This document shows positions 1-30,087 of a stretch of 64,000 bases of DNA, piece by piece. Made by a program: the position numbers and the translations under genes. This DNA comes from Selaginella moellendorffii (lineage: Eukaryota > Plantae > Lycopodiophyta). The stretch's first letter is position 1. Each line of letters opens with the position of its first letter. The notes under the pieces were generated by a model. The model saw only the letters and a list, made by a program, of their open reading frames with translations, was not told the origin of the DNA and ran no database searches. The stretch is from assembly GCF_000143415.4 (NCBI RefSeq), contig NW_003314308.1:1-64000 (forward strand). Direction: 5' to 3'.

Positions 1-69
1 TGAATGAGTTCCCCTTTTTTGACGAGTCTGCAAAATTATAGAAAGGATGAGTCAAATGGAGAGAGAGAG

Positions 70-72
<3 letters not shown>

Positions 73-101
<29 letters not shown>
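73..101. repeat. (AT)n microsatellite
   Basis: Directly visible; shorter allele at ~30008-30026. Confidence 0.9.
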
Positions 102-104
<3 letters not shown>

Positions 105-9537: not shown

Positions 9538-9567
9538 GCACACACACACACACACACACACACAGAG

Positions 9568-9598
<31 letters not shown>

Positions 9599-9613
9599 TA
9601 TATATATATATAT
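9538..9613. repeat. (CA)n/(TA)n compound microsatellite
   Basis: Directly visible; different length at ~39361-39400. Confidence 0.9.
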
Positions 9614-10619
9614 AAAATATTTTAAATTTGGATTTCTCATGATGTCATTAAGCCCAATACTATTCAACATTTAAACTTAAGGACACTTAACCCTAAATAT
9701 TTTGAAACCTTTAATTGATTGAAAAAAAGGGGTACACTTTTATTCATCCCTTTATATTTGAAGTCTATAGATCATCTCTCAAGTCATTCCCTTTAGTTAT
9801 TTACAATTTATTACGTTTCTTTATAAGTTCTTTATAGATGCAACTTTCTTGACACTGTACAAGTCAAGCCTAATTGAAATAAATTAGACTTGCTAAATGT
9901 TAATCTCAACATATGGTATAATTCCTCTAGCCAATTGAAAGTCAAACCCAAGATCCCTCTAATATTAAATGTAAGCTCATAAATTTAAACTTTTTGGGAG
10001 GTCATCCAACTTAGGTTATTCAAACGCAAGAATATTTAACCCCAAGTATTCCAAGACCTCTAACTGGTTACACTTTTATTTATGGGCCCTTTCCCCTTAT
10101 ATTTGAATATCATATATCATTTCTCGAGTCATTCCTATTAGTTGTTTACAATATGTTTCAAGAGATATGGTCATTTTATAATAATTAACTATAGGCTATA
10201 AGGTGAAAATCATATGTATTACATATATAAAGATGATTTTGTTGTGAAATATATATATAAAAAGAAGATCATGCAAAGTAAAAGAGTATCCATAACAATC
10301 AAAAGTTGGTAATATACTCATGTTTACAATACAAGCAATAGATAAAATATTAGTGTGAAGGGATGGAATTATAAACTTTTAAATTTAAATTTCTTGGGAA
10401 GTCATCAAACCTATTACTACTCAACTAAAAGATATGTATTAAGTATTCCAAAACCCTTAATTGATTGGAAAATAAAATACACTTTTGTTCATAAGCCTTT
10501 TCCCTTTGTATTTAAATCTTTACATATCATTTCTCAAATTATTCTTTTTGGTTGATTACAGAAATATAAAAAACTCTCTTGAGAAAAAGAGAGTTTTAAA
10601 TTTGTATCCTAAATAACTT

Positions 10620-11330
10620 GGATAATCATAAAGGAATTCAAAGTACTCAACCATATATTATGTGGCATCAGAGTCAACATTAAGAGTAAAAGAAGAACTA
10701 ATAGTCAATAAAACACCAGTAATATAAGCATGATAAGAATCCTTAGTTAAAGACAAAATAGGAGAAGATGATTCATCGATAGTAGTATATACTTGTTGCT
10801 GTTATCCACTAGAACTAGTAGCAATATAAGCTTAAGGGAGTTGCCATGGATGAAGAATAACATGAGAAATTGAACAAGTATTATTTAGGTATTGATAACA
10901 AAATTAAAAAATATGGTTAGAACGATGATAAAACCCAGAAGATTGATGATAAAGGCATGCTTATCAACCATAATTATAACAACTATTGCCCAAACCACCA
11001 TAAGAATGAAATGAATTTTATTAAAAAGAGAACCACTTATTTGAAACATGAGCATTAATAGATGGTGACTGAGAGTAAAGTGTCGGGGGAAGCATATTGA
11101 ACAACAATTCTAATCACAAATTGCAGTAAGAGCAATCTTAAAATTATAATGATCATTCATCATAAGATTAGTAACCACAATAGAATACTTTAAAGGAAGA
11201 GTGTTCAAAAACCAAAGAAAGCAATCCTCAAGGGTAAGAGTCATATCTCAGCTGTAAGTCTAGTTGTATCATATAGCCTTTGTGATATTGCTTGGATCTA
11301 TAATTCTTAAGTGAAAACTTGATGAAGTTC
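10620..11330 (-). mobile_element. Degenerate Ty1/copia gag-protease remnant
   Basis: Minus frames EDCFLWFLNTLPLKYSIVVTNL (copia gag-like) and LNVDSDAT*YMVEYFEFLYDY (VDSDAT at 10661-10678); riddled with stops. Confidence 0.5.
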
Positions 11331-11624
11331 TTTGGTGTAGTTTGGATTGCAATTGCGACTAATTGCGCTAGTCTGCTGTTGTAGTTGCAAAATGACAAAG
11401 GGCTTTTGATGTTATTGATCTTGTGTTGGTACAGTAATTCTCACCCTAGAACAAGCTACCAAACACAGGAATCAATTAAAAACTAACTTGAGATCTTCAA
11501 TGCTCAAGAAGGCTCATGCAAATGGTTGTGAGTAAGGATAGGCTTGATATTACTAGAATACTCCAAGTCGTGAGAAAATGGATATGCATTGGTCATAAGC
11601 TAGAATACAATAGAGAAGTGCTAA

Positions 11625-13575
11625 CTCTCCCCTTTAATTACTCTTACATGGTGGCAACTGCCACTTCTTCATGAGTCATGATTGTCAACTACGAAGCTTT
11701 GCGCTTTTTTTAGCGAGCTAGTCATTGATGCATTGTGTTTTCGCACATACTATCCTCTAGGACATATCTCTAGAGTTAGGATTTTGCTTTTTGCAATGGA
11801 GTGTCAAGTTTGAGTCCTTGTGGTAACTTTCTTGAGTTTTTTCTTTGTTGGTGTGGTAGTGTTGGAGAAGCTTGCTTTATGTTGGTCTTTGGCATGTTTG
11901 TTAATGAGTCTTAAGACATTTGTTAGTATCTAAATCTTGTTTTGGGTCAAAGTTCTTCAAATTATTATTTTTCTTCATGTTGTTTTCTTGAGCTTGATTT
12001 TTCAGAGTTTTTCTTGTGTTGGATTTTTGAATTTGAGCTTTGCTTTTAAGATTGTTGTTGATGATGTTTGAGTCGTATGATTGGTATTTCTTAAGCTTGT
12101 TAAGGTTGACGGTTTGGAGATGTTTGCCATCGAATGTTGCGATTGTTCCCATTCCTGGAGCTTTGAATTTTTTAATGAGGAATGGTCCTTCTCATCTTGA
12201 CTTCACTTTCGAGCTGATTTTCTCAATGTTTTTTAGAAACCAAAGTACTTGATCATTGATCTTGAATTCTTTATTTTTCTTTAATTTTCTCTTTTAGTCA
12301 TGGTTGAATTTTCTTCAAGCTTAAATGGCTTCGAGTGTCTAAATTGCTTATAGTCTTTCTTTATCAAGTTTTTCTAGTGTGACTAGTTTTTTTTTAATTG
12401 ATTCTTCTTGGTTGATCTCGTAGTGTATTGCCATTCACAATGAACGGCGATGTACTTGAGTGGTATTAGGGCTTCTAAGTCATAAACAAGCTTGAATAAT
12501 GTCGAATTTGTTGAAACCTTGTATGTTGTTCAATATACCCATAAGGTATTGTAAATATAATTGTCCCAATCTTTCTAATTTGTTTTTATGATTTTCTTTA
12601 GGATGTTCTTAAGTGTCTTGTTTGTCAACTCTGTTTAACCATTGCCTTGAGGGTAGTATGGTGTTAAAACCTTATGCTTGTTTACCTTGAAGCTTGTTAT
12701 GAGAAGTCAAATCCTTATCGTTAAAATGGTTCCAGTGGTGTTGTTAGATAAAGCTCTTAAATTTGTTTCTTTGATGTGTACTTGGTTTGTTGACAAATGT
12801 TGCATTCTTGACAAAATTTTACTAAGTTATGCCAAAGTGTTAGCCACCAGAGTCCTACTTGCAAAATCTTGTGAGCTGTGATTTCTTCTGTGAAGTGGCC
12901 TCTTGCTTGTCCATAATGGGCTTCTCCAAGTAGATCTTGAGTTCTTCAAGTTGTACACATCTTCGTAGCACATTGTCTCGTCCTTTTTTGTACAATCCTC
13001 CTCCCACGACTGAATACCTCAAGGCAAATTGTTTACGGTGATTAGAGATGGAGTATCGATTTGGAATTATTGTTGTTATTAGGTAGTAGTAGATGTCATT
13101 CGTCCATGTTGATGATGTGTGGATGCAAAGTATGTTGGAGTCAGGAAAGTCGTCCATATTATATTTTAGTTGTTCACTAGTTGTAATGTAGCTAAGGTGG
13201 TTGGTTTATACATGTTGTTTGCCAGGTTTGTGAATAATCTTGAAGTTGTATTCTTGAAGTAATAAGAACCATTAGGCAATTCTACTGGTGAAGATGGTCT
13301 TGTTGAGGAGATGTAAAAGTGCTTTGTAGTTAACAATGATCTTGACTTTGGTGCCGAGTAGGTAGTGTCAAAACTTTTATAGTGCATAGACCATTGCTAA
13401 AACTTCTTTTTTAGTGGTGGTGTAGTTCATCTCAGCTGAGTTGAGTCTTCAGCTCGCATAATAAATTGGTCGGTCTTATTGTTGTTGAGAAAGTATTGCT
13501 CTGATGGCATAATCAAAGGTGTCAATGTGTATTGAAGTCTTTGTCCCAGTTTGGTTGGGCAAGTATTGGAGCCCT
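11625..13575 (-). mobile_element. Old Ty3/gypsy remnant (RNase H-integrase), cut off by the chromovirus LTR (copy A)
   Basis: APILAQPNWDKDF...PIYYAS...LNSAEMNYTTT (RNase H); LYKKGRDNVLRRCV, TPYYPQGN, GPFLI (integrase); purine tract at ~11625-11636. Confidence 0.8.
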
Positions 13576-13974
13576 TGTTAAGGAATTTGTTAGGAACCCC
13601 CCAATTCTTGCCACATTCCTGACTCTCGCCAAATTCCTGACCCACAGACCACATTCCTGACTCTCAAGACACGACCACATTCCTGACTCTTAAGACACTT
13701 CCCTATTCCTGACTCTTTGATTTCCTGTATGATTCCTGATTCTTGGACCACATTGCTGATGATGATGTGGCACCTCCTCGACCTCAGTTATATTTAGACT
13801 GTCCTCGATCCAAGAGTGCTAAAACTTCATCAACCTATAGTATATATAGGTTAGCCTTGTTACATTTCTTCACAATATGAATCAACATTAGTCTAAGGCC
13901 TTTTCTTCATCTCCACTAGCTTTTCTCTTTGTCTTTTGCATTTTCCAGTCCTGATCTTATTAGGGGTCTTGACA
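13576..13974 (+). repeat. 5' LTR of chromovirus (399 bp, copy A)
   Basis: TGTTAAG...CTTGACA termini; starts exactly where the older RNase H is interrupted; TATATATA at 13841; repeated CCACATTCCTGACTCT motifs; directly precedes gag. Confidence 0.8.
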
Positions 13975-13976
13975 GT

Positions 13977-13991
13977 TTGATTCAAATTGTG
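13977..13991 (+). promoter_or_regulatory. Putative self-priming primer-binding site
   Basis: TTGATTCAAATTGTG is 14/15 complementary to CACAATATGAATCAA at 13871-13885, 30 nt after the start of the TATA box; no TGG-type tRNA PBS. Confidence 0.75.
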
Positions 13992-15914
13992 TTTTCTGCT
14001 TTTGTTTTAGCTCATTTTGATTGTTTGATTGCATTTGCCTTTTTCCCCCTTTTCTTTCTTCTTTGCTGATGGAGTCTCTAAGCCATCTTGATTTCTTTGC
14101 CGAAGTCCTTGCAAAAATCCAGTATGAGAATACCGAGCTAAAGGCAACCCTTCTTCACATGCAACAGAAGCTTGCTTCACTTTCGGCTCAAGGATCAAGC
14201 AGAGTTCCTGAACCAAAGATGAGTTTCCCGGCGATGTTCTCAAGCAAGCGTTTGGAGCTTCGCAGATTCCTGAACCAGATGGAGCTGATCTTTGCACTTC
14301 AATATCGGTGGTACCCCACTCTCGAGTCTCAAATCGGCACGATCGGGACATTGGTCAAAGGTGCAGCTTTGTCATGGTTTTCTCCTCTCCTGGAGAAGAG
14401 CATGAAAGGGGTCATGGTTCTGGAGCTGATGGATCTTCAGTTGTTCAAAGAGGATCTTGAAGCATGTTTTGGTGAGATAGATTGGGTTTGGGCTACCACC
14501 ACAAAGATGAGACGTCTCTCTCAGGGGTCTCATCTTGCCTCAATCTATGCTACAGAGTTCCAACTCCTTGCCTTGGATACTCAATGGGATGAGTGGGCCT
14601 TGATTGATCAATTTCGTTTTGGCCTCAACAACAGTGTCAAGGATTTGTTGCTCACCATGGAGGATCCCACAGACTTGTCAGAAGCCATCAACAAAGCTAT
14701 TTGATGCGATAATCATCTCTTTGAACGTTGTTAGGAAAGTCACCACACCACCGTTTTCCCGTCCCAGACTCAGGAATCCCAGCTTGAGTCTTTGGGGCAT
14801 ACTCCTGAACCTACTACTCCAGTCCTAATGGATATTTCTGGTACTCCCCGACTCATCAGAGGGAAGCTAAATCCTGCTGAGAAGCAAAGTCGAGTATCTT
14901 AGAATCTTTGCCTCTACTGTGCCGATCCTAATCACTAAGCAGCTGTGTGTCCTAAGAAGCCTCCTTGATTGCTCGAGTTCACTCTGCCTTAAGGTCCACC
15001 TCTATTGCAGTCAGGAAACGACCTTGTCTAAACAGAGTAGGAGCTGTCTATTTGAACTCCCCGAATAAAAACAACTTTTCTTCTTTATCAAACTCCTCAC
15101 CACCTTTCATCAAAGCCACCACCAATTCCCACAACTTTCGCATCCTATGTCTCCTTTCTTTCACCGAACAATCAAGACTCAAGGCTTTGGCGCTACTGGA
15201 CTTGAGTGTAACTTCTTGCTTCATGGACACGGACTTTGCTGCCCGACATTATGTTCCTCTTTCTCCTACCATACGGGATATGAGGGTTGAAGGCATTGGC
15301 AAGCAATTTGTGTCTCCATCTTTTGGACTTAGGGAAACATTGCCCGTTTGAGTACATATTGGGTCCACCGTCACTGATATCGCCTTCAACATCATCAACA
15401 ACAAGTCTTCCTCTGTGGTGCTCGGCCTTCCTTGGTTCCAACTGCACCAGCCTCAGATCTATTGGAAGGAATTACAGCTTGTTTCTCCCACATCAGCATC
15501 TCCCATGTCTTCCCCTATTGTTCATCAAGTCCAAATCAGGAAAAGTTCCCTAAACTCAAATTGGGGTTTTGTTCCTAACTCTACAAAGTTTTCACCCTCT
15601 TATTTTCCCTCTTTTCCATCTTACATTGAATAGTATCCTTGTCCCATCATTCCATTCAATCATACACCTCCTCCTATTTCCACAATCACTATGAAAGAAC
15701 TCCTTCATAAAAAACCTATTTTCCTTTTTGCTTTGCATGTTTCTTTTGTCAGTCTTTCTGAGAAGTATCATGATTTTGGGAATGTGTTTGACAAGAAAAA
15801 AGCTAGTGTACTATCTATTCATCGACCTTATGACTGTCCTATTGATTTACAGGAAGGAGCATCACCTTCGTGGGGGCCTATCTACAGATTATCCCCGTTC
15901 GAGTTTAAGGCCTT

Positions 15915-16108
15915 TGTAAGCAACCAAAGGGAACGATTCGAGACATAGTCCATGGGGTTCAAATATAGAGGAAAAGAGCCCATGAACAATAGTGCACCCC
16001 CTTCTCGAATCGGTTAAGGGTCTTGGGATATTTTGGGTTAAGCGTCCTTGGGTTTGAATAGTACTGGGTTGGGTGACCTCCCGGGAAGTCGAAACTTAGG
16101 AGTTTACA
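15915..16108. mobile_element. 194-bp solo LTR inserted in the chromovirus RT (copy A)
   Basis: TGTAAG...TTTACA termini with flanking GCCTT/GCCCT; removal restores LSPFEFKALKEYMDEN. Confidence 0.85.
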
Positions 16109-18704
16109 GCCCTCAAAGAGTACATGGACGAGAACCTTGCATCGGGGTACATTCAGCATTCGCAATCCCTGGCTAGAGCACCTATTTTCTTTGTCAAGAA
16201 GAAGCATGGGAGTTTGCGGTTAGTCATCGACTACTGAGGTTTGAACAAGGTGACTGTTCGGAACCATTATCTTTGGAATGCCTCGGTGGTGTGCACTTCT
16301 TCACCAAGATTCACCTTTATGGAGCATACAACCTGATCCAGATCCGGCCTAGCGATGAATGGAAGACTGCATTCTGAACCCGCTATGGCCACTTCGAGTA
16401 CACGGTCATACCCTTTGGCTTGACAAATGCTCCAGCAATTTTCCAACATATGGCGAACGACATCTTTCGGGAGTTTCTTGATGTGATGGTGATCGTCTAC
16501 CTCGACGACATCCTCATCTACTCAAAAACTTAGGAGGAGCACGACGAGCATGTGCACAAGGTGCTAGTGAAGCTATGGGAACATGGCCTATACGCAAAGC
16601 TTGAGAAATGTTCCTTCAATCAGGAGTCTGTGGAGTTCCTTGGGTACATTGTCACTCCTGAGGGTATCACGTTGGATCCTGCCAAAGTCAAGACTATTCT
16701 CGAATGGGAGCCTCCACAATCAATGTTAGACGTTCAGGTTTTTCTTGGCTTCACCAATTTTTACCGCAAATTCATTGATCACTACTCCGACATTGTCCTT
16801 CCTCTCACGCATCTCACTCGCAAGGATATTCCCTTCTCTTGGTTTGCTGCTGCCCAGCAGGCCTTCGACACACTCAAGGTGGCCTTCAGTTCTGCTCCCA
16901 TCTTGATCCACGCTGATCCCTCACAACCTTTCTTCATCAAGGCAGATACCTCCGACTTTGCCATCGGTGCTGTGCTATCTCAACTCGGAGCAGATCAGCT
17001 CCTTGCCATTGTGGATTCCTTTAGAAAGTGGCATCATTTCTTGGAGGGGGCGAGCCATCAAACAATGGTGTAGACGGATCACAAAAATCTGGAGTACTTT
17101 GCCACTTCCCGAGTTTTGAGCTGTCGTCAAGCAAGGTGGGCACAATTCTTGAGTCAGTTTGACTTTGTTATCAAGTACAAACCTAGAAAGCTTTAGGGCC
17201 TTCCTGATGCTCTTTCAAGGCACTCCTATCTCAGTCTCAGGCTTGGTAATCCTGCTTTTGATCAACAGGATCAAGTTATCCTTGGTCCTGATCTTCTTCA
17301 AGTTATGGCAATTTCCCTGGCCCCTCAGGACTCCTCCTTGATGGACACGATCAGAAATGATCTTCAATCTGATGACCTCGCCAGTGACATTTTCCCCCAT
17401 CTTTAGGCTGGACATCCAATGACTCCCGATTGCCGGCGATTTGACAAATTCAAGTTTTTAGATGGTTTGTTGTACCGTGGGGAGCAGATTTACATTGCTG
17501 AAGGTGATGCTCGAAGGTTGGTCCTGATGGCATGCCACAATAGCCCAACTGCTGGTCACTTTGGCATTGCGAAAACCTATGAGCTAGTTGCACGGGACTT
17601 TTGGTGGCCTCACATGGACAATTACATCAAAGCTTTTGTTACTTCTTGTGACACTTGTGCCCGGAATAAGGTACCTTGCCACTTTCCTTTAGGTTTGCTT
17701 CATTCCTTCTTGGTCCCTTCAGGTCCTTGGGAATCCATCTCAATGGATTTCTTGAGTGATCTTCCAAGTTCTGGAGGCTTCAACAACATTTTAGTCATGG
17801 TGGATTGCTTCACAAAGATGGCACACTTCCTGCCGTGTACCAAGGAGCTTTTAGGCGAGGACATGGCAAAACTGGTATTCAAGGAAATTTTCCGACTTCA
17901 TGGGATTCTTGCAGATGTAGTTTCAGATCCAGGACCTCAATTCATTTCTCATTTTTGGCAACAGTTCCTGCAGCTTCTTGGAGTGAAGGCCAACCTCTCT
18001 TCAGCGTATCATCCTCAAACTGATGGACAGTTCGAGCGAACGATTTAGACATTGGAACAATTCCTGAGGTGTTTCATCAACTATCATCATAATGACTGGT
18101 TCAATATCCTTCCCCTTGCTGAGTTCTCCTATAACAACTCCATTCACTCCTCCCTTCAAGTTTCCCCCTTCTTTACAAACTCTGGCTGAAATCCCTGATT
18201 TAATCTCTCACTTCCTTCTCTATCCGAATCCTCTCGTTCAAATCCCCGCTTTGAGGCATTTATCTCTAACCTCTAAGAAATCCATAACTCCATCTCCTTC
18301 CACCTTCATTGTGCTCAAGAATCTCACAAAACACTCACCAATGTCCATCGTCAGGATTGTCCCTTTTACAATATCGGGGATATCCTTAGGTGAAATATCT
18401 CCACCACCAGGCTATGTCCCAAACTCGATTTCAAATGCCTTGGTCCTTTCCTTATCACTGCCATCATTAATCCTGTCATTTATCACCTTGCACTTCCCTC
18501 CTCATATCAAATTCACCCCGTTTTTCACTCCTCTCTCCTTGAGCCTTATATTCCCAGTCCTATTCCAAATCGGGTCATTCCTCCACCTCCCCAGTGCAGC
18601 TTGAAGATGGGTTTGAGTACAAGGTTCAGGACATCCTCACCGAGCCTCATTAGTTGTTATTCTTAGCATTCAAGTATGTTAAGAAATATATTAGAATATA
18701 CATT

Positions 18705-18864
18705 TATGAGTGCTTGGAATATGGAAAGGGAATACAGAAATGTGCATATCAATTAGCCCAAAAACCCTAGCTTATATACAGGAGCAAGTGGTCCAGATTA
18801 AAACCAAAATCCCACTACGCTAATATCAGTATATGGCATCGTAACCGTACACTTTGCCCTCACA
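18705..18864 (-). repeat. 3' LTR (160 bp, 15-bp internal deletion)
   Basis: Direct repeat of 23502-23676; TA(TG)TGAG...CTCACA termini. Confidence 0.95.
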
Positions 18865-21800
18865 TCATCCCATCCTCTCGGGATAATGGAAGACCATCAG
18901 GGTTCTCTTGAAGATGGGCCGGGAGCTGGAGGAACATCAGGAGGAGGCATCGGTGGATCTGTAGGTGGTATTAACTCCTCCTGATCCCTTTGTACGAAGC
19001 GTATCAGCCGCTGCACATGCACAATCTCTGGAGGATCGGCCTGCTGAACATCATGCCGAACCTCATAAACTTGTGGTCCAACTTGCCACAACACCCGATA
19101 TGGTCCTTTCCATTGCGCAAGAAGCCTCTTAGATAAACCATGTACCGTAAGATGGGGAAAACGGACTAACACCAAATCATCCACTTTGTACTCCGCAGGT
19201 GGACGATGATGGAAGTTATAGCGCCGTTGTTGTCCCACTTGTACGCGGCCTAAGTGTTCGGCAGACTCTGCTCGAACAAGTGGAAGAATGCTCGTCAAAT
19301 ACTGATCCCATGATCTAGCATCGGCAGCTCGTGGCAATCGCAAAGGTAAACCCAGCTCCGTTGGTAATATTGGATCATGACCATATAGAAGTTTATATGG
19401 TGAAGCACCAACATAACTCTGCACCCCTGTAACATATGCATACCGAAGAGACGGCAAATAACCATCCCAATCCAAATGCTGAAAGTTCACATACTTCACA
19501 ATCATCCCTTTGAATGTCCGAACAAGCCGTTCCACCAGACTGTCTGATTGTGGATGATAAGCACTCGTAAAAGTGTGGCGTATCCCCAACCGAGATGTCA
19601 AAACATGAAATACCTCAGCCATAAATGCGGGACCATTATCCAAAAGAATCCGCTCTGGACAAGAATGCTGGAACACCACTCGATTGAGGAGGAAGTATCC
19701 AACAGCAGTTGCAGAGGCGCTAGCAAGAGCACCAACTTCCACCCAACAAGTCAAGTAGTCAGAAGCAATAATAACATACTCATTGCCAGCAGTTGACCAT
19801 GGAAAAGGTCCCATAAGATCAAACGCCACTAACTCAAACAGACGGGAAACCACAATTGACTCCAACCATCCTTCTGCAGCACGAGGGGGAGTATTACGAG
19901 ATTGGCACCAAACGTAGCTACGCACATACAGGATAATATCACGTCGCATCTCCGGCCAATAGAAAGACCTGCGCAGCTTCTCGGTGACACGACGGTGTCC
20001 CATATGCCCACCAAGAACAGGAGAATCATGGTAGGCATGGAAAAACCGCGGAATAAACACCGAAGGCACCACCAGCCGTAAATGATCATCAGGATCCGTC
20101 CCCACAAAATAAAGAAGGCCATCTTCAAGGCGATATTGAGAATGTAAATGCCGGAAAGGCAAGTCATCAGCAAGTGATGCAGGATTTTCAAACCCATCTC
20201 GAAGCCTTCGAATCCACGGCTCAATTTTTTGAGCCTCGCGAACCTCATCAAGATAAGGTAGATCTTGCTCTGCGCCCTGTGGACACTGAACGTCAAGGAC
20301 AGCAACCGCCGACGGCACAGAATCCTCATCTAGAAAATCCACAGGTGCTGGAACAACAGGTTCGTCAGAAACATGAGAAGTGAGTGGAGAAGGAAGAGGA
20401 GCTCGAGAAAGGGCATCAGCATCAACCATAGAACTCCCTGGGCGATGAACAACATCAAAATCATATATCTGAAGCTTCAAAGCCCATCAAGCCGTATGAC
20501 CAACCAGGTTCTTCCGCTTCAATAATGAAGTAACAGTAGCATGGTCACCTTCAAGTAACGTCCGAGAACCATGTAGATATGCATGAAGTTTCTCGAAACC
20601 CCAGACTGCTGCTAAACACTCCTTCTCCGTCGTGGAGTAGTTCATCTCCGCTGGTTGTAATGTATAGCTTATATATGCAATGGGATGGTGCTGACCAGAC
20701 ACACTTGAGCTCTCTTGCATCAACACACCTCCAAGACCAATGTCAGAAGCATCCACGTGCAAAATAAAAGGTCAAGTGTAGTCAGGATACGCCAAAACCG
20801 GAGGAGTCGTCAATAGCTCTTTGAGATCCACGAACGCCCGCTCACAATCCGAAGACCAGATGAAAGATGACGTGGATGACTTCAGCAACGCTCGCAATGG
20901 TGTAGTGTGATCGGAAAGATGATCCACAAAACGACCAAGATACTGCACCTTATCCAAAAAGCGTTGCACATCATTCACACACTTCGGAGTAGGGAACTTT
21001 AGAACAGCCACAATTTTGTCAGGATCAACTTGCAAACCCTCACGAGAAATACGGTACCCAAGATAAGTTGTGTCCTTGGACCCAAACACATACTTTGACC
21101 GCTTCAGCTTTAAACCAACGTCGTGTAACTGATCCAACACTTTACAAACATCACGAACGTGCTCCTCCCACGTCCCCTCCGAGTGGATCAAGACATCATC
21201 AATGAAGTCAGCAGTCACCTCTGGCATATCGCAAAGAACCTCGTCCATCATCCATTGGAAAGTTGCTGGAGCATTGTTCAAACCAAACGGCATCACCAAG
21301 AACTCATACAAACCAAATGGTGTACGAAAAGCAATCTTAGGAATATCTTCTTCAGCCATCGGTACTTGCCAATACCCAGAAGGAAGATCTAGCTTGGTGA
21401 ACCAACGACTTTGCCCCAGACGATCCAAAAGATCAGCAGTATGTGGAAGAGGATACACATCTGGGATCGTCACTTCGTTTAACGGACGATAGTCGATAAC
21501 GAAACGAATACTCCCATCAAGCTTCGTCACAAGATGAGGTTCACATGCCCAAGGACTCCGCGACTTCCGAATAACACCCTTCTCCAGCATTTCCTTGACG
21601 TTTGCTCGTAAAATCTTGATCTCCTTAGGTGACCGACAACAAACAGGAACCTTGATTGGACGAGCATCCCCGGTTGGAATCGGATGACATGTGGCAATCT
21701 TGGCCCCAGACGATAGGTCAAATTCAAATAGATCAGAATACTCCTTCATGAGCCGGTCAACTGCTGCAACAAAAGATCGTCGGAGGGATCGGAAAAGGGA

Positions 21801-23480
21801 AAAGCAGAACAAGATGGAAACACAAAAGGAAAGAGTGGGGGAACAAAAGTAATGGAAGCAGAGGTAGAAGTAGAGGGACGAAGAGGTATGGAAGTGAGAG
21901 GAATGGATGAAACATAAGGAAGTATAAGACAAGGGGAGAAGCCTCAAAGTCACACTTGGCATGATTGCGCTGCAACCAATCCATACCAAGAATGAGGTCA
22001 AAAGCTTGATTTGGCACCACCCGCAACGACTGCAACTCAAGCTCAAGATCGCTCACACGCACAATCAGGTCCACCTCATCCCGTGCACATGCATGTGTAC
22101 TTCCGTTGCCATAAAGAATGAACACTGGTTCTGCCGCACGACGCAAGTGTAGACGACAACGTGTGGCAACAGGTCGAGCAATAGAAGATAAACTCGAACC
22201 TGTATCAACCAACATGGAGAGAATAATAGGAGACCTCTTGTTATAAAAATGAACTTGGAAAGTAAACATTGGATGAACTGGTGCCGAGTGAACCCCTTGA
22301 TGATACTCCCGAAAGAAAGATGGAGGGGTCACTGATTTATTCGCGCAAGGTCCCTCTGTTACTCGCGCGACTCCTCGTTTCCCGGATGCATCTCGGTGTC
22401 CAGACCTTCCACTGCAGCAGCACCCATGGGATGTTGCTGACGCCAAGGTCTCCACCTAGGAAATGGAGGTCGCCAATCCGGAAAATGACGGCAACGCCGA
22501 TAAGTATGACCAACTTCATCACACGCCTAGCAGTGAACATCACGGCCACGACCATGTCCTCGCGCTTGTCCTTGCACTCGAGCAGCAGCAGCATCAACCT
22601 CCATTGGAACAGGACCATCACTCATAGGAAGTGGAGCGGAAGGACGTGCAGCGAGAAGTGGAAGAGGCGACGTCTCATAACGTTGTGCCAAGCGAAGTGC
22701 ATCGTCAAGGGTGGCAGGAGCAAGTGCATGCATAAGGCCGACAAGATCTTGACGAAGTGCTAGCCACAACATTCCTAGCTTGATCCGCTCCAACATATTT
22801 GGCTCCGCATGAAGCAAAAGACTTCGGAAACGAACGCCAAATTGCATCACCGACTCAGATGGCCCTTGGCGAAGACAATGCAATTGTTGGAAAGCATCAT
22901 CACAATCATCGGTATGTCCGAAGGCGCGTTTGAAGACGTACGGGAGAACACTCCAATCCCCACGAGTGGCTGCGCTCAAACCATTGTACCACTGCAACAC
23001 CGTCCCTTGGAGACACATGGGAAACTCACGCAACCGTCGAGCATCATCCCAAGAATGATATGTGGCAATCACCGTGAAGTGATCGAACCAATGGTACACA
23101 TCATCCCCAGGATTCCCGAGAAAGAACTCCGGCCGAACGCGAGGATTGGCACCAAGAGCAAGAGGAGTTGTACCACGTGCTGTGAATGCCGCCATCAACT
23201 GAGTTTGGTTGTTCAATTACAAGCGCATAGCATCAAGCAATTGTACCAATTGCTGCTCTAGAGTCAAATGAGGAAATTGCTGATTTGCCATGAAGATGAA
23301 CGAAAAAGAAAGAGCAAAAGAGAGAAATGACAAAAAGCTAGAAGGAAATGGTAGATCTAAATAACGCAAAAAGCTAGATCTAAACCAAAACCCTGAATAG
23401 AAAGAACAAAAGACAGGAAATGGAAAAAACTAGATTTAAACCAAAATCCCAAATCCAAGCACTCCTTAGGGACAATCAAA

Positions 23481-23500
23481 GATGCCCCTTACCTCCACCA
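23481..23500 (-). promoter_or_regulatory. PBS complementary to a tRNA-Ala-type 3' end
   Basis: Minus strand TGGTGGAGGTAAGGGGCATC, 1 nt after the LTR; tRNA-Ala ends in ...CTCCACCA. Confidence 0.75.
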
Positions 23501-23501
23501 A

Positions 23502-23676
23502 TGTGAGTGCTTAGAATATGGAAAGGGAATACAGAAATGTGCATATCAATTAGCCCAAAAACCCTAGCTTATATACTGGAGCAAGTGGTCCAAATTAAAA
23601 CCAATCCGATAGCTACCAAAATCCCACTATGCTAATATTAGTATACGGCATCATAACTGTACACTTGGCCCTCACA
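23502..23676 (-). repeat. 5' LTR (175 bp)
   Basis: TGTGAG...CTCACA, followed by CATT. Confidence 0.95.
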
Positions 23677-23773
23677 CATTGTGATATATTTTAGATAGCA
23701 CAAAAGAAATTTAAAAAGAGGAGTAGTATATTTTAAATAGCACAACAAATTATTTAAAAAGAGGAGTAGTACT

Positions 23774-24255
23774 CAATGGAATTTAACAATTGGTTCCTCA
23801 AGGTATGGAAGAAACTAGAAACCTAGACAGATAAAATTGATGGATCAATTCCTCTCTCTCTCTCTCTCTCTCTCTTCATTTGTTTCTTTCTTTCTATGAT
23901 TTTGCAGAGTTGTCAAAAAAGGTACTTGGCATTGGCTTTGAGGTTCCCATAGGCAAAAAGAAACTCATTCACTCTGTACCACAACAGAACTTGCAGGGGT
24001 GAGCTTTTAAATGTTCTGAAGCTACTCTCTTGTTTTGACTTCCAGGTTCCGTGGATTCGAAAGGCCTGTAGGAAAACGTTTCACAAAGGTGCAGATATTC
24101 TCTCTACAAAAATCAACAATCCCACCATTTTCTTCATCACATCTCCCGAGAATTGGGATAGCTCTCCAGCTTCCACTTGATCTCTGCCCACTTGAGATGA
24201 GATGCATGGATCCTACAAGAAGCCAGCCGTGGACACCACGCTGTTGCATCTCCCG
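23774..24255 (+). repeat. Left arm of long inverted repeat (fragment of unidentified spliced gene X)
   Basis: Reverse complement of 29628-30087; same translations on opposite strands; contains GT/AG sites and a (CT)n tract. Confidence 0.9.
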
Positions 24256-24262
24256 AGCTATT

Positions 24263-24354
24263 TTGTTCAAGATGTGTGGTATACCGACGTGAACTATAAA
24301 TTGCAGTGTTGTTCAAGATGTGTGGTATACCGACGTGAACTATAAATTGCAGTG
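24263..24354 (+). repeat. Perfect 46-bp tandem duplication, unit A only
   Basis: ttgttcaagatgtgtggtataccgacgtgaactataaattgcagtg twice; single copy at ~55378. Confidence 0.9.
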
Positions 24355-24709
24355 CAGGATCACATTCTAACTGATTTAATGCTAGAAGCACTTATGATAT
24401 CTGACACCTCCAAAATGTTGGGCCTTCGTGACTTCCAACGCAAGAAATTAACCAGCTAGGAAACCCAGAGCAGTTATTAAAGAAATACGTTCCATTTCTT
24501 TGTGAGGAGTGTCAGCAATCGCAACTAACACTGATACTCTTGAATTTTTTTTCATCTGTGCATAATTTAGGTTGATTATGTATCTCAGTTCGGTGCTGAC
24601 CAGTATCTACGTCTGGGGAAACTTCTTGTATTGTGTAGGATCATCTCGTTCTTGGACTCCAACATAATAAAATTCCATCGAGAAGAAATACTAATCTTCT
24701 CTATTGCAG

Positions 24710-25538
24710 GTTCGTGATAGTATTTATCTTATTTTCGCAAAACTTTCCGGGAAGTTTACTGTTAATTCTCCTTGGGCATACTCCCGATGCTGTTTCTTTT
24801 CTTTTGGAAAGCTCAGTGTTTTACTTGTCGTCACTAACACTAATACCAGATAGCACTACGCCTGTACAAGTACATAGCCTGAACATCCTAGCATGGTTTA
24901 TTTCTGAAACTTCTATTTCGGACGAGAAGCAGTTACTGTTGGCCGTGGTTGGCTGCATTGTAGCTCTTGCAAGCACTTTGAAGGTAAATCTTGATTTCAT
25001 AATTTAAACCAGTCTTAAATCTTTGTTTGTAGTCTGTGCCATGCGGTGCTTTAAAGAAATCAAGCAGGAAGGTCAAGTCTTGAAGCTTTCTGTGCTTTTG
25101 CGAGCCATACATGACAATTCCAAGAACTTCGTAAACAACAGGAGGTTTTTGTCATCCTTTCTTCATACTAGTCTGCTCATCGAATGAGAGCAAGACAATT
25201 AGAACATGTGGTACGTTTCATTAAGTTGCACCTCCGCCAACAATTTCAATCTTTCTAAGAACTTCAGACATCTCCCACCTTGCTTTGTTGGTTCGATCCA
25301 GCTGAAAATTATTGACTTGCCAGAAGGAAAGAAAGCAGAAAAGAATTCCTTGATTTGTTTCGTTACATGTATACTTCTTTTCTTTCTGGCATGTCACCAG
25401 TTTTCTATGTTGGATCAAATCAATAGAGCAAGGCGGCTGTATGAAAGATTGAGACCCTCTGCATTAGCTATTGCATCAACAACCCACAGATCTATGGCTG
25501 AGGGAGGGATGGAAATGAGTGGGATGACCATAACCTAA
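24710..25538 (+). pseudogene. Unidentified multi-exon gene fragment, helical/HEAT-repeat-like (possibly HEATR1/UTP10-like)
   Basis: GT/AG-bounded segments PVQVHSLNILAWF...CIVALASTLK and CAMRCFKEIKQEG; family call is from memory and weak. Confidence 0.3.
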
Positions 25539-25556
25539 ACGAGACGCAGACAAAGT

Positions 25557-26508
25557 TTAATACCTCACAGTCTCAATGGCTGCTTTGCCATCTAGTTTTG
25601 AAGCGTAGAACGATTGAAGGTAATTTCCATAGACGCTATCTTTGAAGCAAGCAGGCGCTTCGTCAGCGACCAGCTGCGCCAGCAGAGCAATGTGACTATC
25701 TTCTGCTGGCCCATAGAATGAAGCAATGGAGACTCGAGTTCGCTCCGAGTTGACAACTGCTCGGTGCTCCACACTCTTGTACGCATCATTGGAAAGAATC
25801 TGAATAACACACAATCAAAACCTGGAAATCTCATGCATGCACGACTATGACGATCGAAAGAAAGCTTACCTGAAGTTGATCTCCAATGTTGACAACAAAG
25901 GCGCCAGGCAGAGGTTTGATCGGCACCCACGCTCCACAGTGTACAATCTGGAGGCCATCTTTCACCCTGGTGTCCTGCTGGAGTATAGTGAAACCGTTTG
26001 GATCCGCGTGAGCGTCCAGTCCGATTGTAAGCTCCGGCTCCGGACAAGGTGGATAGTAGTTCATCCTCATCGCATGCCTCTCTCCTCCAAAAGCTTCCTC
26101 CAGAGCACCACTTTCCAGTCCCAGTGACTCCGAGAACAATCCAAGCACTCTTTTCGCGGCGACGAACGAGACGTGGGTGGGGCGGACGACTGAATCGCTG
26201 GCGAGGGCGAGGAAGAGATCAATCGCTTGCGCGCTCTGGCCGTTTGCGCAGAGCGTCGAGATCATGATGTTACAGGAGAAGGCGTTCTTGTGGACGAGAT
26301 CGTGGAAGACGGACCATGCGTCCGGGAGGCCGGAGCACTTGCCATACATGAGGATGAGGGGATTGCTGAACAAGGGGTGGTGGCGTAGGTCGAGGGTGGC
26401 GGCCAGGCGGCGGTGCAAGAGCTTCCCTCGCGGGAGGGAGTTGGAATCACCACATTGGCGCAGAAGAGTCGCGATTTGGCGTGGAGATGCCTGCAGGAGG
26501 CACCGCGA
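25557..26508 (-). CDS. Chimeric PPR (PLS-type repeats) / 2-oxoglutarate-Fe(II) dioxygenase C-terminal half (copy A; start codon uncertain)
   Basis: ATLLRQCGDS...LILMYGKCSGLPDAWSVF...VRPTHVSFVAA fused in frame at ~26155 to KRVLGLFSESLGL...MNYYPPCP...HAD...; intron 25869-25800; exon 2 with SVEHRA and RVSIA. Confidence 0.85.
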
Positions 26509-26974
26509 TCACTCCTCTTGCTACTTCGCTGGATGTCATGGCAAAGACACACTCTCTCTCTCCATGATCCTGTGAAGAGCTTCATATGGATCATCACATT
26601 TTTTGTCAATAGCTTCACATAGGCACTAAACAACAGACATAAAGGAACTCAGAAGCAATCAGTCTTCTAAGCATCTTATCCTCCGGCATCAAATGTTGGA
26701 TCAGTGATGTCCTTTTTGAAGTCTCGCTTGTTGTTTGAGGTGGGCACGTGCTCCTATTGGTGTTCATGGGGTGTTGCAAAGCTGTGGGCTCTCAATGTAA
26801 AGGGGATTTCCTTGGCAAAAGAGCTTGAAATTTTGGTGTGCTGTTTTTCTTGTTTTACCATTTTGTTTTACATGAGACATGTAGGAAATCCTGAGCTCAA
26901 AAGTTCACTAAGATTCATTTGCATAAACTACACTTTGGCAGAAAAATTATAACATTTACTACAAAATACAATAA

Positions 26975-27562
26975 TCAGTTAAAAACAACCCATTCATCAT
27001 CGAATGAATCTAGGACGTACAATTTGCCTTGCTTCTCCACACATTGTCCAATATTCCAGCGATGGATAACTTTGGTAAAATCCACACACTTTGACAGCGC
27101 AAGAAGGAACGGGGTTACATCTGCCAAGAAGTGGTCATCCTTTGACCCCTCAAACTTTGGAGCCACCACCACGCTCTCTTGATGACCTTGGTAGAAGTCA
27201 ATAATGTCATCCAGTGCCACCACCCGCTTGAAATCCCGAAACCCTACATGGTCAAGATTCTTGACTTTCGTCCCGTCCTTTAGAACAACGCAATTGCCAC
27301 CATGTAGCCTCCTCGACACAAGCCCCCCAGTAGGATCCAGATGGTCAACCACAAGGTTGACATACTTCTCCTGGGCGGCACTAAACACCACGATATCGTA
27401 CACTTTTGAAACCTTCCCCAGAAATTCATCTACTCCTGGTCTCTTCATGATGTGGAGTGGTGCATCATCGTCGAATTCCATGCTGAAATCTACAGAAGAG
27501 ACGAGATCCTTATGAGCGTATACCAGTGTATTGTCTAGATCGAGAATGAGTGTCTTCTTCAT
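26975..27562 (-). CDS. NIF/FCP1/SCP-type HAD phosphatase, single exon, 195 aa (copy A)
   Basis: KKTLILDLDNTLV (DxDxT), KRPGVDEFL, IVVFSAA, VKNL...RDFKRVVALDD. Confidence 0.93.
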   Translation of the reverse strand: MKKTLILDLDNTLVYAHKDLVSSVDFSMEFDDDAPLHIMKRPGVDEFLGKVSKVYDIVVFSAAQEKYVNLVVDHLDPTGGLVSRRLHGGNCVVLKDGTKVKNLDHVGFRDFKRVVALDDIIDFYQGHQESVVVAPKFEGSKDDHFLADVTPFLLALSKCVDFTKVIHRWNIGQCVEKQGKLYVLDSFDDEWVVFN

Positions 27563-27627
27563 GATACCCTAAAAAATGACTCGTATTCCGTGGAAATGAA
27601 GAAGGGCCACAAAAGGTGACCAAAGGT

Positions 27628-27660
27628 GCCACGTCTGCCCTAAACTCTATCTGACGTGGC
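27628..27660. promoter_or_regulatory. Inverted pair of ACGT-core (ABRE/G-box-like) motifs in the shared upstream region
   Basis: GCCACGTC 27628-27635 and GACGTGGC 27653-27660; both kept in B, one in copy C (~62868). Confidence 0.4.
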
Positions 27661-27987
27661 CTTTTGTATTCTTGTACCCTACTATTGGCAAAGCCCAAGG
27701 GAGCCGGAGGAGCGCGTCGATCCTCAATGCAGCTTAGATTCCAAATCTAGGGCTGCCGTGATCGTCTGGCAAGGGCAGAGGTGAGTGCGCTGCTGGTTTG
27801 CGGCCTACTGTTGGCGAGGCGGAAGGAGGTGAGCATGCAATTGTAGCAAGTTTGTTGTGAATCCATTGACGGACAGCTGATGTGCGCATTCTAGGCTCCA
27901 GCCGTTGGATAAGTGCAGTAACGACTCCTCAATCTCTTTTGTGCTTTCAGCAACGACTCACAATGTTAACACTGACCAGAGTCCACC

Positions 27988-29346
27988 ATGGAGAGGAAGA
28001 GAGCTGCTGGTCCGAAGAAACTACACACTCAGAAGCGATCCGACGTCATGCTCGAAAGGACCCGCCCACTGGATCCGATTAACCGAGCTCGATCAGGTTG
28101 GTCAAAACTTGAAACATCTGCACTTGTCTGACGAAGATCCTCGTTGAAGCAGGAGCAGGAGAAACTGATCATGATGCATCCGCGTTGCAGGCTGCTCCTG
28201 ACGCTGGTACGAAGAATTCCTTTTGTTGGCTGACACGACTCTTTGCTGGTTTGATTCATGACTTGCAGAATATGTTCGGCAATTCCTCGCAATGGCGCAA
28301 CGCTTGGAGAGATTCAAGATGCTCTCGGCGAATGTTGTGAGCGGGATCGTGGAATCGATCCAAAAGGGAGGGGAGACTCCAGTTGCAGCAGCAGGTGGAT
28401 ACAATAATTTCTCTCTTTGGCATCTTTTCGCTTCTGAGTGGCCCCTTGTCTCTCTTGTCCAGGCCGCTTCTGCAGCAGCTACGAAGTGCTCGCTTGTGTT
28501 GGCCAGGGGGCGTCCGGGAAAGTATACAAGTGCCGTAGCAAGGAGGACGAACAAATCTACGCCATCAAAGTCATCAAGGTTCGCACAGCAACGAAGTCCA
28601 GAGACCAGGATGTCGCGCTCGTCTTCAAGGAGGGAGAGATGCTCCAGCGCTGCGAACACCCCAACATAGTCAAATACTTCGACATGTGGAAGGAGGAAGG
28701 CGAGCCGGGCAAGTCGAAAGTGTACATTGTCATGGAGTTTTGTGGCCGCTCGCTCCAGTCGGTGCTCCTCGGCGGTGAGTCACCACCTGCAGATGCGTTT
28801 AGGCAGCTTCTTCAAGCTGTGGCGCATGTGCACGACAACGTGGGTGTTCATCGGGATATAGCACCACACAACATCTTCGTCACAGACGATGGACGCATCA
28901 AGCTGGGAGATTTCGGTCTTGGTAGGCAAATGAAACATCTCTTCCATCTCTCATTTGTTGGCTTACAGCTAAAAATAAGGAGTCCATGCTCGAGACCGAA
29001 AATATCAAGAAGGGGAGAGCAGTTTACTACTCTCCCCAGCGCCGGAGCAACTCAACCTACACTGACATGCTTGCGCTTGGAGTTATACTCTTCGAACTTC
29101 ATTGGAGGTGTCCCCCGGACCAGGTTTGGCTGCAGTTTGTGCAACGTGCTTGCTTAGTTTGGTGAATCTGTGTAGGAAAGGGAGTCGGTATTGATTGACG
29201 TCCGGGATGGCGTTTTACCAGCAGACTGGGCGTACCAACACCCATCAATTGCGCCCAAGGTGTTGGAGCTGGTCGCAGCAAGACGCGACCAGCGTCCATC
29301 CGCGCGCGACATCCTCTGCGATCCTGCCTGGCAATCTGTTTGGTGA
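27988..29346 (+). CDS. Stand-alone GCN2/eIF2-alpha-kinase-like Ser/Thr kinase, 6 exons, ~357 aa (copy A, apparently intact)
   Basis: CCACCATGG start; exons 27988-28096, 28153-28206, 28269-28394, 28463-28921, 28969-29123, 29176-29346 splice in frame (1074 nt). Motifs GQGASG, YAIK, HPNIVKYFDMWKE, YIVMEFC, HRDIAPHN, DFGLAK, DMLALGVILFEL, ERESVLIDVRDGVLP. Confidence 0.85.
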
Positions 29347-29627
29347 GTTTCTTTCATTACTCTGATTCTCTGCTTGGCTTCTAACATGTCTGTTTGCAGC
29401 TGATCGTTGTAGTTGTTTAGATTTACTTGCTCCTTTTTGTCATCTTTGCAGTCTTGGTCTTTTTCAGCATGCTGATTTCGATTCAGAAATATGAATTCGT
29501 TGCCAGTTCATTGCATTTCTGCCAGGCCGAGTTGTTCTCGATCAAGGTTGCTGAACAACTCAAGGGCTTCCGACATTCTTGTAGTCAGGTTCGGTTCAAG
29601 GAACAGGATTGGTAAACAGCACATTGA

Positions 29628-30087
29628 CGGGAGATGCAACAGCGTGGTGTCCACGGCTGGCTTCTTGTAGGGTCCATGCATCTCACCTCAAGTGGGCAGA
29701 GATCGAGTGGAAGCTGGAGAGCTATCCCAATTCTCGGGAGATGCGATGAAGAAAATGGCGGGATTGTTGATTTTTGTAGAGAGAATATTCGCACCTTTGA
29801 CCGGTTGACCTTTTTACAGGGAAACGTTTTCCTACAGGCCTTTCTGAATTGAATCCAAGGAACCTGGAAGTCAAAACAAGAAAGTAGCTTCAGAACACTC
29901 AAAAGCTCACCCCTGCAAGTTCTGTTGTGGTACAGGGTGAATGAGTTCCCCTTTTTTGACGAGTCTGCAAAATTATAGAAAGGATGAGTCAAATGGAGAG
30001 AGAGAAATATATATATATATATATATGAATTGATCCAGGTTTCTTGTTTTTTTCATACCTTGAGGAACCAATCGTTCAATTCTACTG
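29628..30087 (-). repeat. Right arm of long inverted repeat (gene X fragment, convergent with the kinase)
   Basis: Reverse complement of 23774-24255. Confidence 0.9.

What the first reader, a model, noticed from the sequence alone, without database searches (positions are those of the whole stretch)
26975..29346. Head-to-head module: minimal GCN2-like kinase plus HAD phosphatase, repeated three times (candidate toxin-antidote or switch)
Seen: start codons only ~425 bp apart; the pair recurs at 58049-60473 and 62257-63675, and in copy C it sits next to a different left neighbour (PDR fragment), so the pair travels as a unit. Known: the kinase motifs track plant GCN2 as I recall them (HRDxxPxN lacking the usual Lys, YIxMExC, FRQ, DMxxLGxIxFEL, ERxxVLxD), yet there is no RWD or HisRS-like regulatory domain and almost no kinase insert. 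Deregulated eIF2-alpha kinase domains inhibit translation, and DxDxT NIF enzymes are Ser/Thr protein phosphatases. Inference: a co-regulated writer/eraser pair, possibly a selfish or defence toxin-antidote cassette.
Basis: partly seen in the sequence, partly recalled or inferred. Interest (0 to 1): 0.8.

Follow-up and report, generated by a model that had tools for sequence, protein, structure and literature searches.

The report
Old kinase-phosphatase neighbours in a repeat
In the spikemoss Selaginella moellendorffii, an expressed stand-alone eIF2-alpha-kinase-like gene lies head-to-head with a small SCP-type phosphatase gene inside a 30-kb tandem repeat; they are old neighbours, but nothing shows a shared switch or a poison-antidote system.

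Summary
The gene pair is real. An intronless 195-aa NIF/SCP phosphatase lies at 26975-27562 (-). A multi-exon kinase of 357/358 aa lies at 27988-29403 (+). Their ATGs are 425 bp apart.

Copies A and B are two units of a ~30-kb retrotransposon-rich tandem repeat (95-99% identical) that recurs on at least 8 scaffolds. B's kinase carries a frameshifting 58-bp insertion. Copy C is a decayed relic.

The kinase belongs with the eIF2-alpha (PEK) kinases by sequence, tree and predicted fold, but not with GCN2 in particular. It has no regulatory domain, no catalytic-loop Lys, and lacks two Thr that are critical in PKR.

Its only close relative in 1.84 billion proteins is a Selaginella paralog (39% identity). 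That paralog also sits next to a NIF phosphatase (38% identity), but on the same strand. The adjacency is therefore old; the head-to-head promoter is not conserved.

RNA-seq shows the kinase transcribed and spliced as modelled. The phosphatase has zero depth in 3 of 4 runs. Co-regulation and toxin-antidote readings are unsupported.

This scan found the same pair before on other DNA of this genome (s1-431173, s1-421628), with the same verdict.

The parts
26975..27562 (-). Copy A: intronless NIF/SCP-type phosphatase gene (195 aa plus stop), with DLDNT, S, K and DD catalytic residues intact
   Evidence: ORF. Pfam NIF 126 bits, cut-off 21.8. Alignment to human SCP1. RNA depth 0 in X21, X22 and X3; one 339-nt contig in X1.
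27563..27692 (.). Short divergent promoter region between the phosphatase ATG and the 5' ends of the kinase RNA (contigs reach 27661; read ends pile at 27693-27699)
   Evidence: read laying tables 2, 6 and 8
27693..27987 (+). Kinase 5' UTR in three exons (about 27693-27828, 27895-27917, 27980-27987), with an alternative donor at 27913
   Evidence: GT..AG joints 27826/27893 (+2), 27917/27980 and 27912/27980
27988..29403 (+). Copy A kinase coding region. Exons: 27988-28096; 28153 (major) or 28150 (RefSeq X1) to 28206; 28269-28394; 28463-28921; 28969-29123; 29176-29342; 29400-29403. The product is a stand-alone PEK-like kinase of 357/358 aa.
   Evidence: All six coding introns confirmed by RNA-seq joints. 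Each exon translation is contained in P0038/P0039. Pkinase 120 bits on the largest exon.
58049..58636 (-). Copy B phosphatase, intact, 3 aa different from copy A
59057..60473 (+). Copy B kinase, disrupted by a unique 58-bp insertion at 59899-59956. Substitutions are enriched 3' of the insertion.
62155..62831 (-). Copy C phosphatase relic (88% nt identity), matching in three different frames
62922..63712 (+). Copy C kinase relic (73% nt identity). The promoter and 5' exons are deleted, and matches are fragmented across frames.
1..29938 (.). One unit of the ~30-kb tandem repeat that carries the pair. It also holds Ty3/gypsy remnants (14021-18601 +, 18900-23216 -) and a PPR-fragment/2OG-oxygenase mosaic (25560-26418 -).
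   Evidence: Self-comparison. The same unit, joined end to start, on GL377769.1, GL377821.1 and GL377730.1. Pfam.

Best explanation
These are two ordinary nuclear genes of Selaginella moellendorffii, and they are old chromosomal neighbours.

The first gene encodes a lineage-specific, stand-alone member of the eIF2-alpha-kinase (PEK) family. It consists of a kinase domain plus about 95 N-terminal residues that include two predicted helices.

The second gene encodes a small SCP/NIF-type Asp-based phosphatase.

In this window both genes are passengers of a ~30-kb, retrotransposon-rich tandem repeat whose recent amplification produced copies A and B and many more on other scaffolds. Copy C is an older, decayed copy.

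The kinase is transcribed from a start about 100-135 bp from the phosphatase ATG and is spliced as in RefSeq. The phosphatase is off, or nearly off, in the sampled tissues. The two genes are therefore regulated separately.

Inferred, not shown: the kinase is probably an active Ser/Thr kinase of PEK fold. Its substrate may not be eIF2-alpha, because it lacks the equivalents of PKR Thr451 and Thr487 and the catalytic-loop Lys. The phosphatase probably acts only in some condition or tissue, if it acts at all.
For: Organism and annotation.

Repeat structure.

Expression and splicing. Kinase depth is 75-260 in X21 and 15-84 in X22, on one strand. Phosphatase depth is 0 in X21, X22 and X3.

PEK placement:
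- With the full kinase as query, four of the five best PDB sequence hits are eIF2-alpha kinases (HRI 107, PERK 101 and 96, GCN2 96 bits), with NEK1 (95) level with GCN2.
- For the paralog, the top 17 PDB hits are all PEK.
- The C-lobe alone hits only HRI, PERK and PKR.
- The Foldseek top 45 are all PERK/GCN2/PKR.
- In the tree, the two Selaginella kinases form a clade (98/96) inside the clade that holds the PERK- and PKR-labelled rows (97/88), apart from the NEK clade.

Old linkage:
- The best single-domain relative in 1.84e9 representatives is the Selaginella paralog P0058/P0204 (182 bits; the next best among the listed hits is 102 bits).
- Its locus has NIF P0228 (38% identical to ours) 640 bp upstream.
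- Apart from a shared gypsy element, nothing else is shared between the two loci.

Deviant residues. Their importance in PKR: PMC11556786.
Against: The adjacency has persisted through about 60% sequence divergence of both genes. This could reflect selection for linkage, meaning a functional tie.

One contig run (X1) holds a 339-nt phosphatase contig at about 40% of the kinase's depth, so the phosphatase may be expressed in some samples.

Only four runs were laid, and the tissue types are unknown to me.

Reads cannot be assigned to single copies. 165 of 197 reads carry the non-A variant at 28341.

The phosphatase tree does not resolve whether the two Selaginella NIF clades are sisters.
Confidence: 0.6

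Rival explanations
1. The pair is a conditional writer/eraser switch. The kinase and the neighbouring phosphatase act on the same substrate (eIF2-alpha or another protein), and the phosphatase is induced only in certain tissues or stresses to reset the mark.
For: Two deeply diverged kinase paralogs both keep a NIF neighbour. The phosphatase catalytic residues and ORF are intact in all five unit copies read. Phosphatase codon changes run 5 synonymous to 4 nonsynonymous. There is a possible phosphatase transcript contig in X1.
Against: There is no co-expression in 3 of 4 runs. The gene orientation differs between the two old pairs, so a shared promoter is not conserved. The closest phosphatase paralog, P0004 (54% identity), and P0003 both lack a kinase neighbour. 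SCP-type enzymes are not known eIF2-alpha phosphatases (my own knowledge).
Confidence: 0.2
2. The pair is a selfish or defensive toxin-antidote cassette. The unregulated PEK kinase domain blocks translation, and the phosphatase is the antidote.
For: The kinase has a PEK-type domain without regulatory domains. The two genes are tightly linked. The locus is amplified.
Against: The supposed toxin is well expressed while the supposed antidote is silent. The unit of amplification is a 30-kb TE-rich repeat, not the pair. The residues equivalent to PKR Thr451 and Thr487 are Arg and Pro. Copies decay like ordinary duplicates.
Confidence: 0.04
3. The kinase is catalytically impaired and acts as a pseudokinase or scaffold. 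The neighbourhood with the phosphatase is then neutral inheritance with no biochemical meaning.
For: P0006 has Ala, Arg and Gln at three columns that are at least 90% conserved (Lys231, Thr267, Glu274). The paralog shares the loss of the catalytic-loop Lys and of the APE Glu.
Against: The Gly-rich loop, the VAIK Lys, the alphaC Glu, the HRD Asp, the Asn and the DFG are all present. A basic or His residue sits at the +4 position used by tyrosine kinases. The gene is expressed and kept intact in most copies.
Confidence: 0.12

Closest known systems
eIF2-alpha kinases (PEK family: GCN2, PERK, HRI, PKR)
   Same: The kinase domain is nearest to these by sequence, by tree and by predicted fold. The C-lobe carries the family's ER...L..VR..G stretch around helix alphaG. 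RefSeq already names the gene 'eIF2-alpha kinase-like'.
   Different: There is no RWD, pseudokinase, HisRS-like, dsRBD, haem or luminal domain, and no long kinase insert. The catalytic loop reads HRDIAPHN instead of HRDLKPxN. The activation-loop GT is GR. SPE is SPQ. The equivalent of PKR Thr487 is Pro. The substrate is untested.
Human SCP1/CTDSP1 and plant SCP1-like small phosphatases (NIF/FCP1-homology HAD phosphatases)
   Same: Same fold family and size. The DxDxT motif and the other catalytic residues align.
   Different: It is only about 30% identical. It falls below NCBIfam's cut-off for the dullard-like domain (113.9 vs 139.15 bits). It belongs to a small group with few relatives outside Selaginella. 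It is nearly silent in the RNA runs laid.
Selaginella paralog locus on GL377674.1 (P0204/P0058 kinase plus P0228 NIF)
   Same: The same two families are adjacent. The kinase is 39% and the phosphatase 38% identical to ours. Both kinases read HRDIAPxN.
   Different: The genes are on the same strand. The kinase is modelled as a fusion with a near-complete Fumble/pantothenate-kinase domain.
Eukaryotic toxin-antidote elements (wtf in fission yeast, peel-1/zeel-1 in C. elegans, Medea in Tribolium; cited from my own knowledge)
   Same: Two tightly linked genes, with copy-number expansion.
   Different: No evidence of toxicity, rescue, co-expression or drive. Amplification is of a 30-kb repeat that holds many other sequences.

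Membership tests
PEK / eIF2-alpha kinase family | The kinase domain is closer to PEK members than to other kinase groups | tested here: met
   PDB sequence ranking. The C-lobe hits PEK only. Foldseek top 45 are all PEK. Tree placement with the PERK/PKR-labelled rows at 97/88, apart from NEK. Caveat: no labelled GCN2, HRI, WEE1 or MYT1 rows were in the tree.
PEK / eIF2-alpha kinase family | Conserved Thr at the start of helix alphaG (PKR Thr487) and activation-loop Gly-Thr (PKR Gly450-Thr451) | tested here: not met
   The HMMER alignments to HRI and PERK put Pro opposite the alphaG Thr and Arg opposite the activation-loop Thr. These sites are among the few highly constrained ones in PKR (PMC11556786).
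PEK / eIF2-alpha kinase family | Phosphorylates eIF2-alpha on Ser51 | not testable with these tools
   This needs a kinase assay or a yeast assay.
GCN2 specifically | RWD, pseudokinase, HisRS-like and C-terminal domains flanking the kinase | tested here: not met
   Only PF00069/PF07714 are on record for the 358-aa protein. The per-exon Pfam scan gave only kinase hits. GCN2 scores no better than HRI or PERK.
NIF / SCP-FCP HAD phosphatases | NIF domain with DxDxT and the other catalytic residues | tested here: met
   Pfam NIF 1.3e-36, full length 1-159/160. DLDNT, S, K and DD align to SCP1.
Divergent (bidirectional-promoter) co-expressed gene pair | Head-to-head starts less than 1 kb apart | tested here: met
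   ATG to ATG is 425 bp. The kinase RNA 5' ends lie about 100-135 bp from the phosphatase ATG.
Divergent (bidirectional-promoter) co-expressed gene pair | Both genes are transcribed together | tested here: not met
   Phosphatase depth is 0 where kinase depth is 75-260 (X21), 15-84 (X22) or about 380 (X3). Only X1 has a phosphatase contig. Four runs only.
Toxin-antidote / toxin-antitoxin cassette | The two genes are inherited and moved as one unit | tested here: inconclusive
   Old co-duplication is likely. The copies in the window, however, arise from a 30-kb repeat. Phosphatase paralogs also stand alone.
Toxin-antidote / toxin-antitoxin cassette | Toxicity of one product and neutralisation by the other | not testable with these tools
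   This needs expression assays.

The most novel reading that the evidence does not exclude
Selaginella carries a lineage-specific two-gene module that selection has kept linked since before a deep duplication. It pairs a regulatory-domain-less PEK kinase with a tyrosine-kinase-like catalytic loop (HRDIAPxN) and a dedicated SCP-type phosphatase. The module would act as a translation or stress switch, or as a poison-antidote pair, in a tissue not sampled here, such as sporangia or spores.
Probability: 0.08. Interest if true: 0.75.

Novelty: new variant of a known kind. Interest (0 to 1): 0.3.

Why it matters
Land plants are usually credited with a single eIF2-alpha kinase, GCN2. A second, expressed, stand-alone PEK-type kinase subfamily confined to a lycophyte would be of some interest for the evolution of translational stress signalling. 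This is more so because its catalytic loop is altered and it has kept a phosphatase neighbour for a long time.

As it stands, both genes are already auto-annotated. The recurrence is explained by a segmental repeat. The attractive switch and poison-antidote readings have no support. The finding is therefore a modest curiosity rather than a new system.

Tried and rejected
1. Complex prediction on the kinase domain (P0006:95-358) with the phosphatase gave 'no answer'. It is not evidence either way.

2. Substitution counts among five unit copies: phosphatase 5 synonymous to 4 nonsynonymous, kinase 5 to 8, with most kinase changes in the broken copy B. These are too few for a selection test.

3. 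Phosphatase tree: the P0001/P0003/P0004 clade and the P0228/P0229 clade are each fully supported. Their sisterhood is unresolved. The nearest outsiders are Asimina triloba NIFs, whose locus has no PEK kinase.

4. The context of P0229, a third NIF paralog 75% identical to P0228, and of P0203 could not be fetched because neither is on record.

5. The neighbour of P0004 is a RING-like protein, not a kinase.

6. Paper searches found no description of these genes.

7. The 58-bp insertion of copy B has no second copy in the DNA held. A reading as a new intron was rejected because it has no AG acceptor.

8. Slip: the script joined copy A's exons with an off-by-one error and printed an out-of-frame translation. 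I then worked exon by exon on whole codons.

Full report
**Where the window comes from.** The phosphatase and kinase translations match RefSeq proteins of Selaginella moellendorffii at 99-100% identity. Copy A's kinase exons are all contained in P0038/P0039, which RefSeq names 'eukaryotic translation initiation factor 2-alpha kinase-like' isoforms X1/X2. Both genes are therefore already auto-annotated. No paper in the held library describes them.

**The observation.**
- The minus strand holds a 195-aa intronless ORF at 26975-27562 with a full-length NIF domain (Pfam 1.3e-36).
- The plus strand holds a kinase gene whose ATG at 27988 is 425 bp from the phosphatase ATG.
- Two raw stranded RNA-seq runs and two contig runs confirm every intron with GT..AG joints. 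The introns are 27829-27894 and 27918-27979 in the 5' UTR, then 28097-28152 (the RefSeq X1 acceptor is 3 nt earlier), 28207-28268, 28395-28462, 28922-28968, 29124-29175 and 29343-29399.
- The last intron produces the C-terminal ...QSVC seen in the database proteins.

**The three copies.**
- A self-comparison shows that the window is a tandem repeat of a ~30-kb unit (1-29838 against 29938-60960, 95-99% identity). There are N gaps.
- The same unit, joined end to start, lies on GL377769.1, GL377821.1 and GL377730.1 at 96-99.5% identity.
- The 90%-identity kinase cluster has 17 members on at least eight scaffolds.
- The unit also holds two Ty3/gypsy remnants and a PPR-fragment/2OG-oxygenase mosaic.
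- Copies A and B are thus one position in two repeat units.
- B's phosphatase is intact. B's kinase carries a 58-bp insertion (59899-59956) just before the HRD loop. The insertion shifts the frame and is unique among the copies held.
- Copy C is 88% (phosphatase) and 73% (kinase) identical. It lacks about 720 bp comprising the intergenic region and the 5' kinase exons, and it matches only in pieces on different frames.
- C's left flank matches the junction between a full PDR ABC gene and phosphatase P0003 on GL377684.1. That locus has no kinase, and in P0003 the DxDxT Thr is replaced by Pro.
- The recurrence in the window is therefore segmental duplication and decay, not movement of a two-gene cassette.

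**The kinase.**
- With the database protein P0006 (one residue different from copy A), four of the five best PDB sequence hits are eIF2-alpha kinases: HRI 107, PERK 101 and 96, GCN2 96 bits. NEK1 scores 95, PKMYT1 85 and PKR 80.
- The C-terminal lobe alone (residues 262-358) hits only HRI, PERK and PKR in the whole PDB.
- An AlphaFold2 model was built (mean pLDDT 79, most of the kinase core above 85). Its 45 best Foldseek matches are PERK, GCN2 and PKR structures.
- In a maximum-likelihood tree of 40 kinase domains, the two Selaginella kinases form a clade (98/96). That clade sits inside the clade holding the PERK- and PKR-labelled rows (97/88), apart from the NEK clade (99/95).
- That tree lacks labelled GCN2, HRI, WEE1 and MYT1 rows, so it is a limited test.
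- Nothing ties the kinase to GCN2 in particular. No domain other than the kinase domain is on record.

**Deviant residues.**
- In a 36-sequence alignment, P0006 has Ala, Arg and Gln at three columns that are at least 90% Lys (catalytic loop, HRDLK), Thr (activation-loop GT) and Glu (APE).
- The alignments to HRI and PERK put Pro opposite the Thr at the start of helix alphaG.
- In PKR, Gly450, Thr451 and Thr487 are among the few highly constrained sites, and Thr487 is needed for the change in eIF2-alpha that allows its phosphorylation (PMC11556786).
- The Gly-rich loop, the VAIK Lys, the HRD Asp, the Asn and the DFG are kept.
- The catalytic loop reads HRDIAPHN here and HRDIAPKN in the paralog. 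It has Ala at the Ser/Thr-kinase Lys position and His or Lys at the position where tyrosine kinases carry Arg. That comparison with tyrosine kinases rests on my own knowledge.
- I infer a probably active kinase whose substrate need not be eIF2-alpha.

**The phosphatase.** It aligns over its full length with human SCP1 and keeps the equivalents of DLDNT, Ser (for Thr152), Lys and DD. Relatives are few. They are the near-copies, P0004 (54% identity), P0228/P0229 (about 37%), and then a drop to Asimina and assorted eukaryotes.

**Is the pairing older than the repeat?**
- The exhaustive search of 1.84 billion representatives found one close relative, S. moellendorffii P0058/P0204. It is 39% identical and scores 182 bits on a single domain. 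The next best single domain among the listed hits scores 102 bits.
- At its locus (GL377674.1) a NIF phosphatase, P0228, lies 640 bp upstream on the same strand. It is 38% identical to ours. A second identical NIF copy lies 12.9 kb further on.
- Apart from a shared gypsy family, only these two genes are shared between that locus and the window.
- Two paralogous kinases that both have a NIF neighbour, with similar divergence in both families, is best explained by duplication of an ancestral adjacent pair.
- The phosphatase tree neither proves nor excludes sisterhood of the two NIF clades.
- The orientation differs between the two pairs, so a shared divergent promoter is not the conserved feature.
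- Phosphatase paralogs P0004 and P0003 have no kinase neighbour. The Asimina relatives have none either.
- This agrees with two earlier follow-ups of this scan on other pieces of the genome (s1-431173 and s1-421628). I re-derived the result here.

**Expression.**
- The kinase is covered at depth 75-260 (X21) and 15-84 (X22), on one strand only.
- RNA 5' ends lie at 27661-27699, about 100-135 bp from the phosphatase ATG.
- The phosphatase has depth 0 in X21, X22 and X3.
- Only X1 has a 339-nt contig (27224-27562), at about 40% of the kinase's word depth. It carries the copy-B-type base at 27434.
- At 28341, 165 of 197 reads carry C. Most kinase RNA therefore comes from copies of the P0036 type rather than from copy A itself.
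- In these samples the supposed toxin is on and the supposed antidote is off.

**Verdict.** The kinase is PEK-like rather than GCN2-like. The linkage is old. The three copies are a by-product of a 30-kb repeat. Co-regulation is contradicted by the RNA data at hand. Nothing supports a toxin-antidote system.

- The complex prediction gave no answer.
- Database proteins P0006, P0038 and P0058 served instead.
- One script did join exons internally and printed an out-of-frame translation. I then replaced that analysis with a per-exon one.

Noticed in passing
L007 (GL377674.1:521282-543752) 8717-12471 and 21603-22244: The paralog kinase is modelled by RefSeq (P0204, 635 aa, named 'wee1-like protein kinase 2') as a fusion of a near-complete Fumble/type II pantothenate kinase domain (Pfam 2.6e-63) with the PEK-like kinase domain. 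A NIF phosphatase gene precedes it, and the NIF recurs identically 12.9 kb downstream.
   Followed up: partly
window 28855-28878 (HRDIAPHN) and P0058 residues 269-276: Both Selaginella paralogs lack the Ser/Thr-kinase catalytic-loop Lys. They carry His or Lys at the +4 position, where tyrosine kinases have Arg. Substrate specificity is unknown.
   Followed up: partly
window 59899-59956: Copy B has a unique 58-bp insertion in its kinase exon. Together with the preceding GT it begins GTAGGCAA, the same 8 letters as the donor of the next intron (28922-28929). It has no AG acceptor and so shifts the frame. Substitutions are enriched 3' of it.
   Followed up: yes
window 14021-18601 (+) and 18900-23216 (-): Two Ty3/gypsy retrotransposon remnants (gag, RT, RNase H, integrase) make up about a third of the 30-kb repeat unit. 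A related element lies near the paralog locus (L007 2835-5335).
   Followed up: partly
window 25560-26418 (-): A single ORF joins a PPR-repeat fragment to a 2OG-Fe(II) oxygenase domain. It looks like a gene-fragment mosaic just downstream of the phosphatase.
   Followed up: no
window 27826-27980 and 28097-28153: The kinase 5' UTR shows alternative donors (27913/27918), an exon-skipping form and a 5-bp deletion variant at 27826 in about a quarter of reads. A NAGNAG acceptor (28150/28153) gives the 358- and 357-aa isoforms, and the reads favour the shorter one.
   Followed up: partly
L002 (GL377684.1) 8001-9026: Phosphatase copy P0003 (93% identical) is inverted relative to the 2OG/PPR flank. 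It lies tail-to-tail with a full-length PDR ABC transporter gene, has Pro in place of the DxDxT Thr, and has no kinase beside it.
   Followed up: partly
window 28256-28710: A few reads of opposite orientation (depth 0.3-4 in X21) overlap the kinase exons. This is possibly weak antisense transcription.
   Followed up: no
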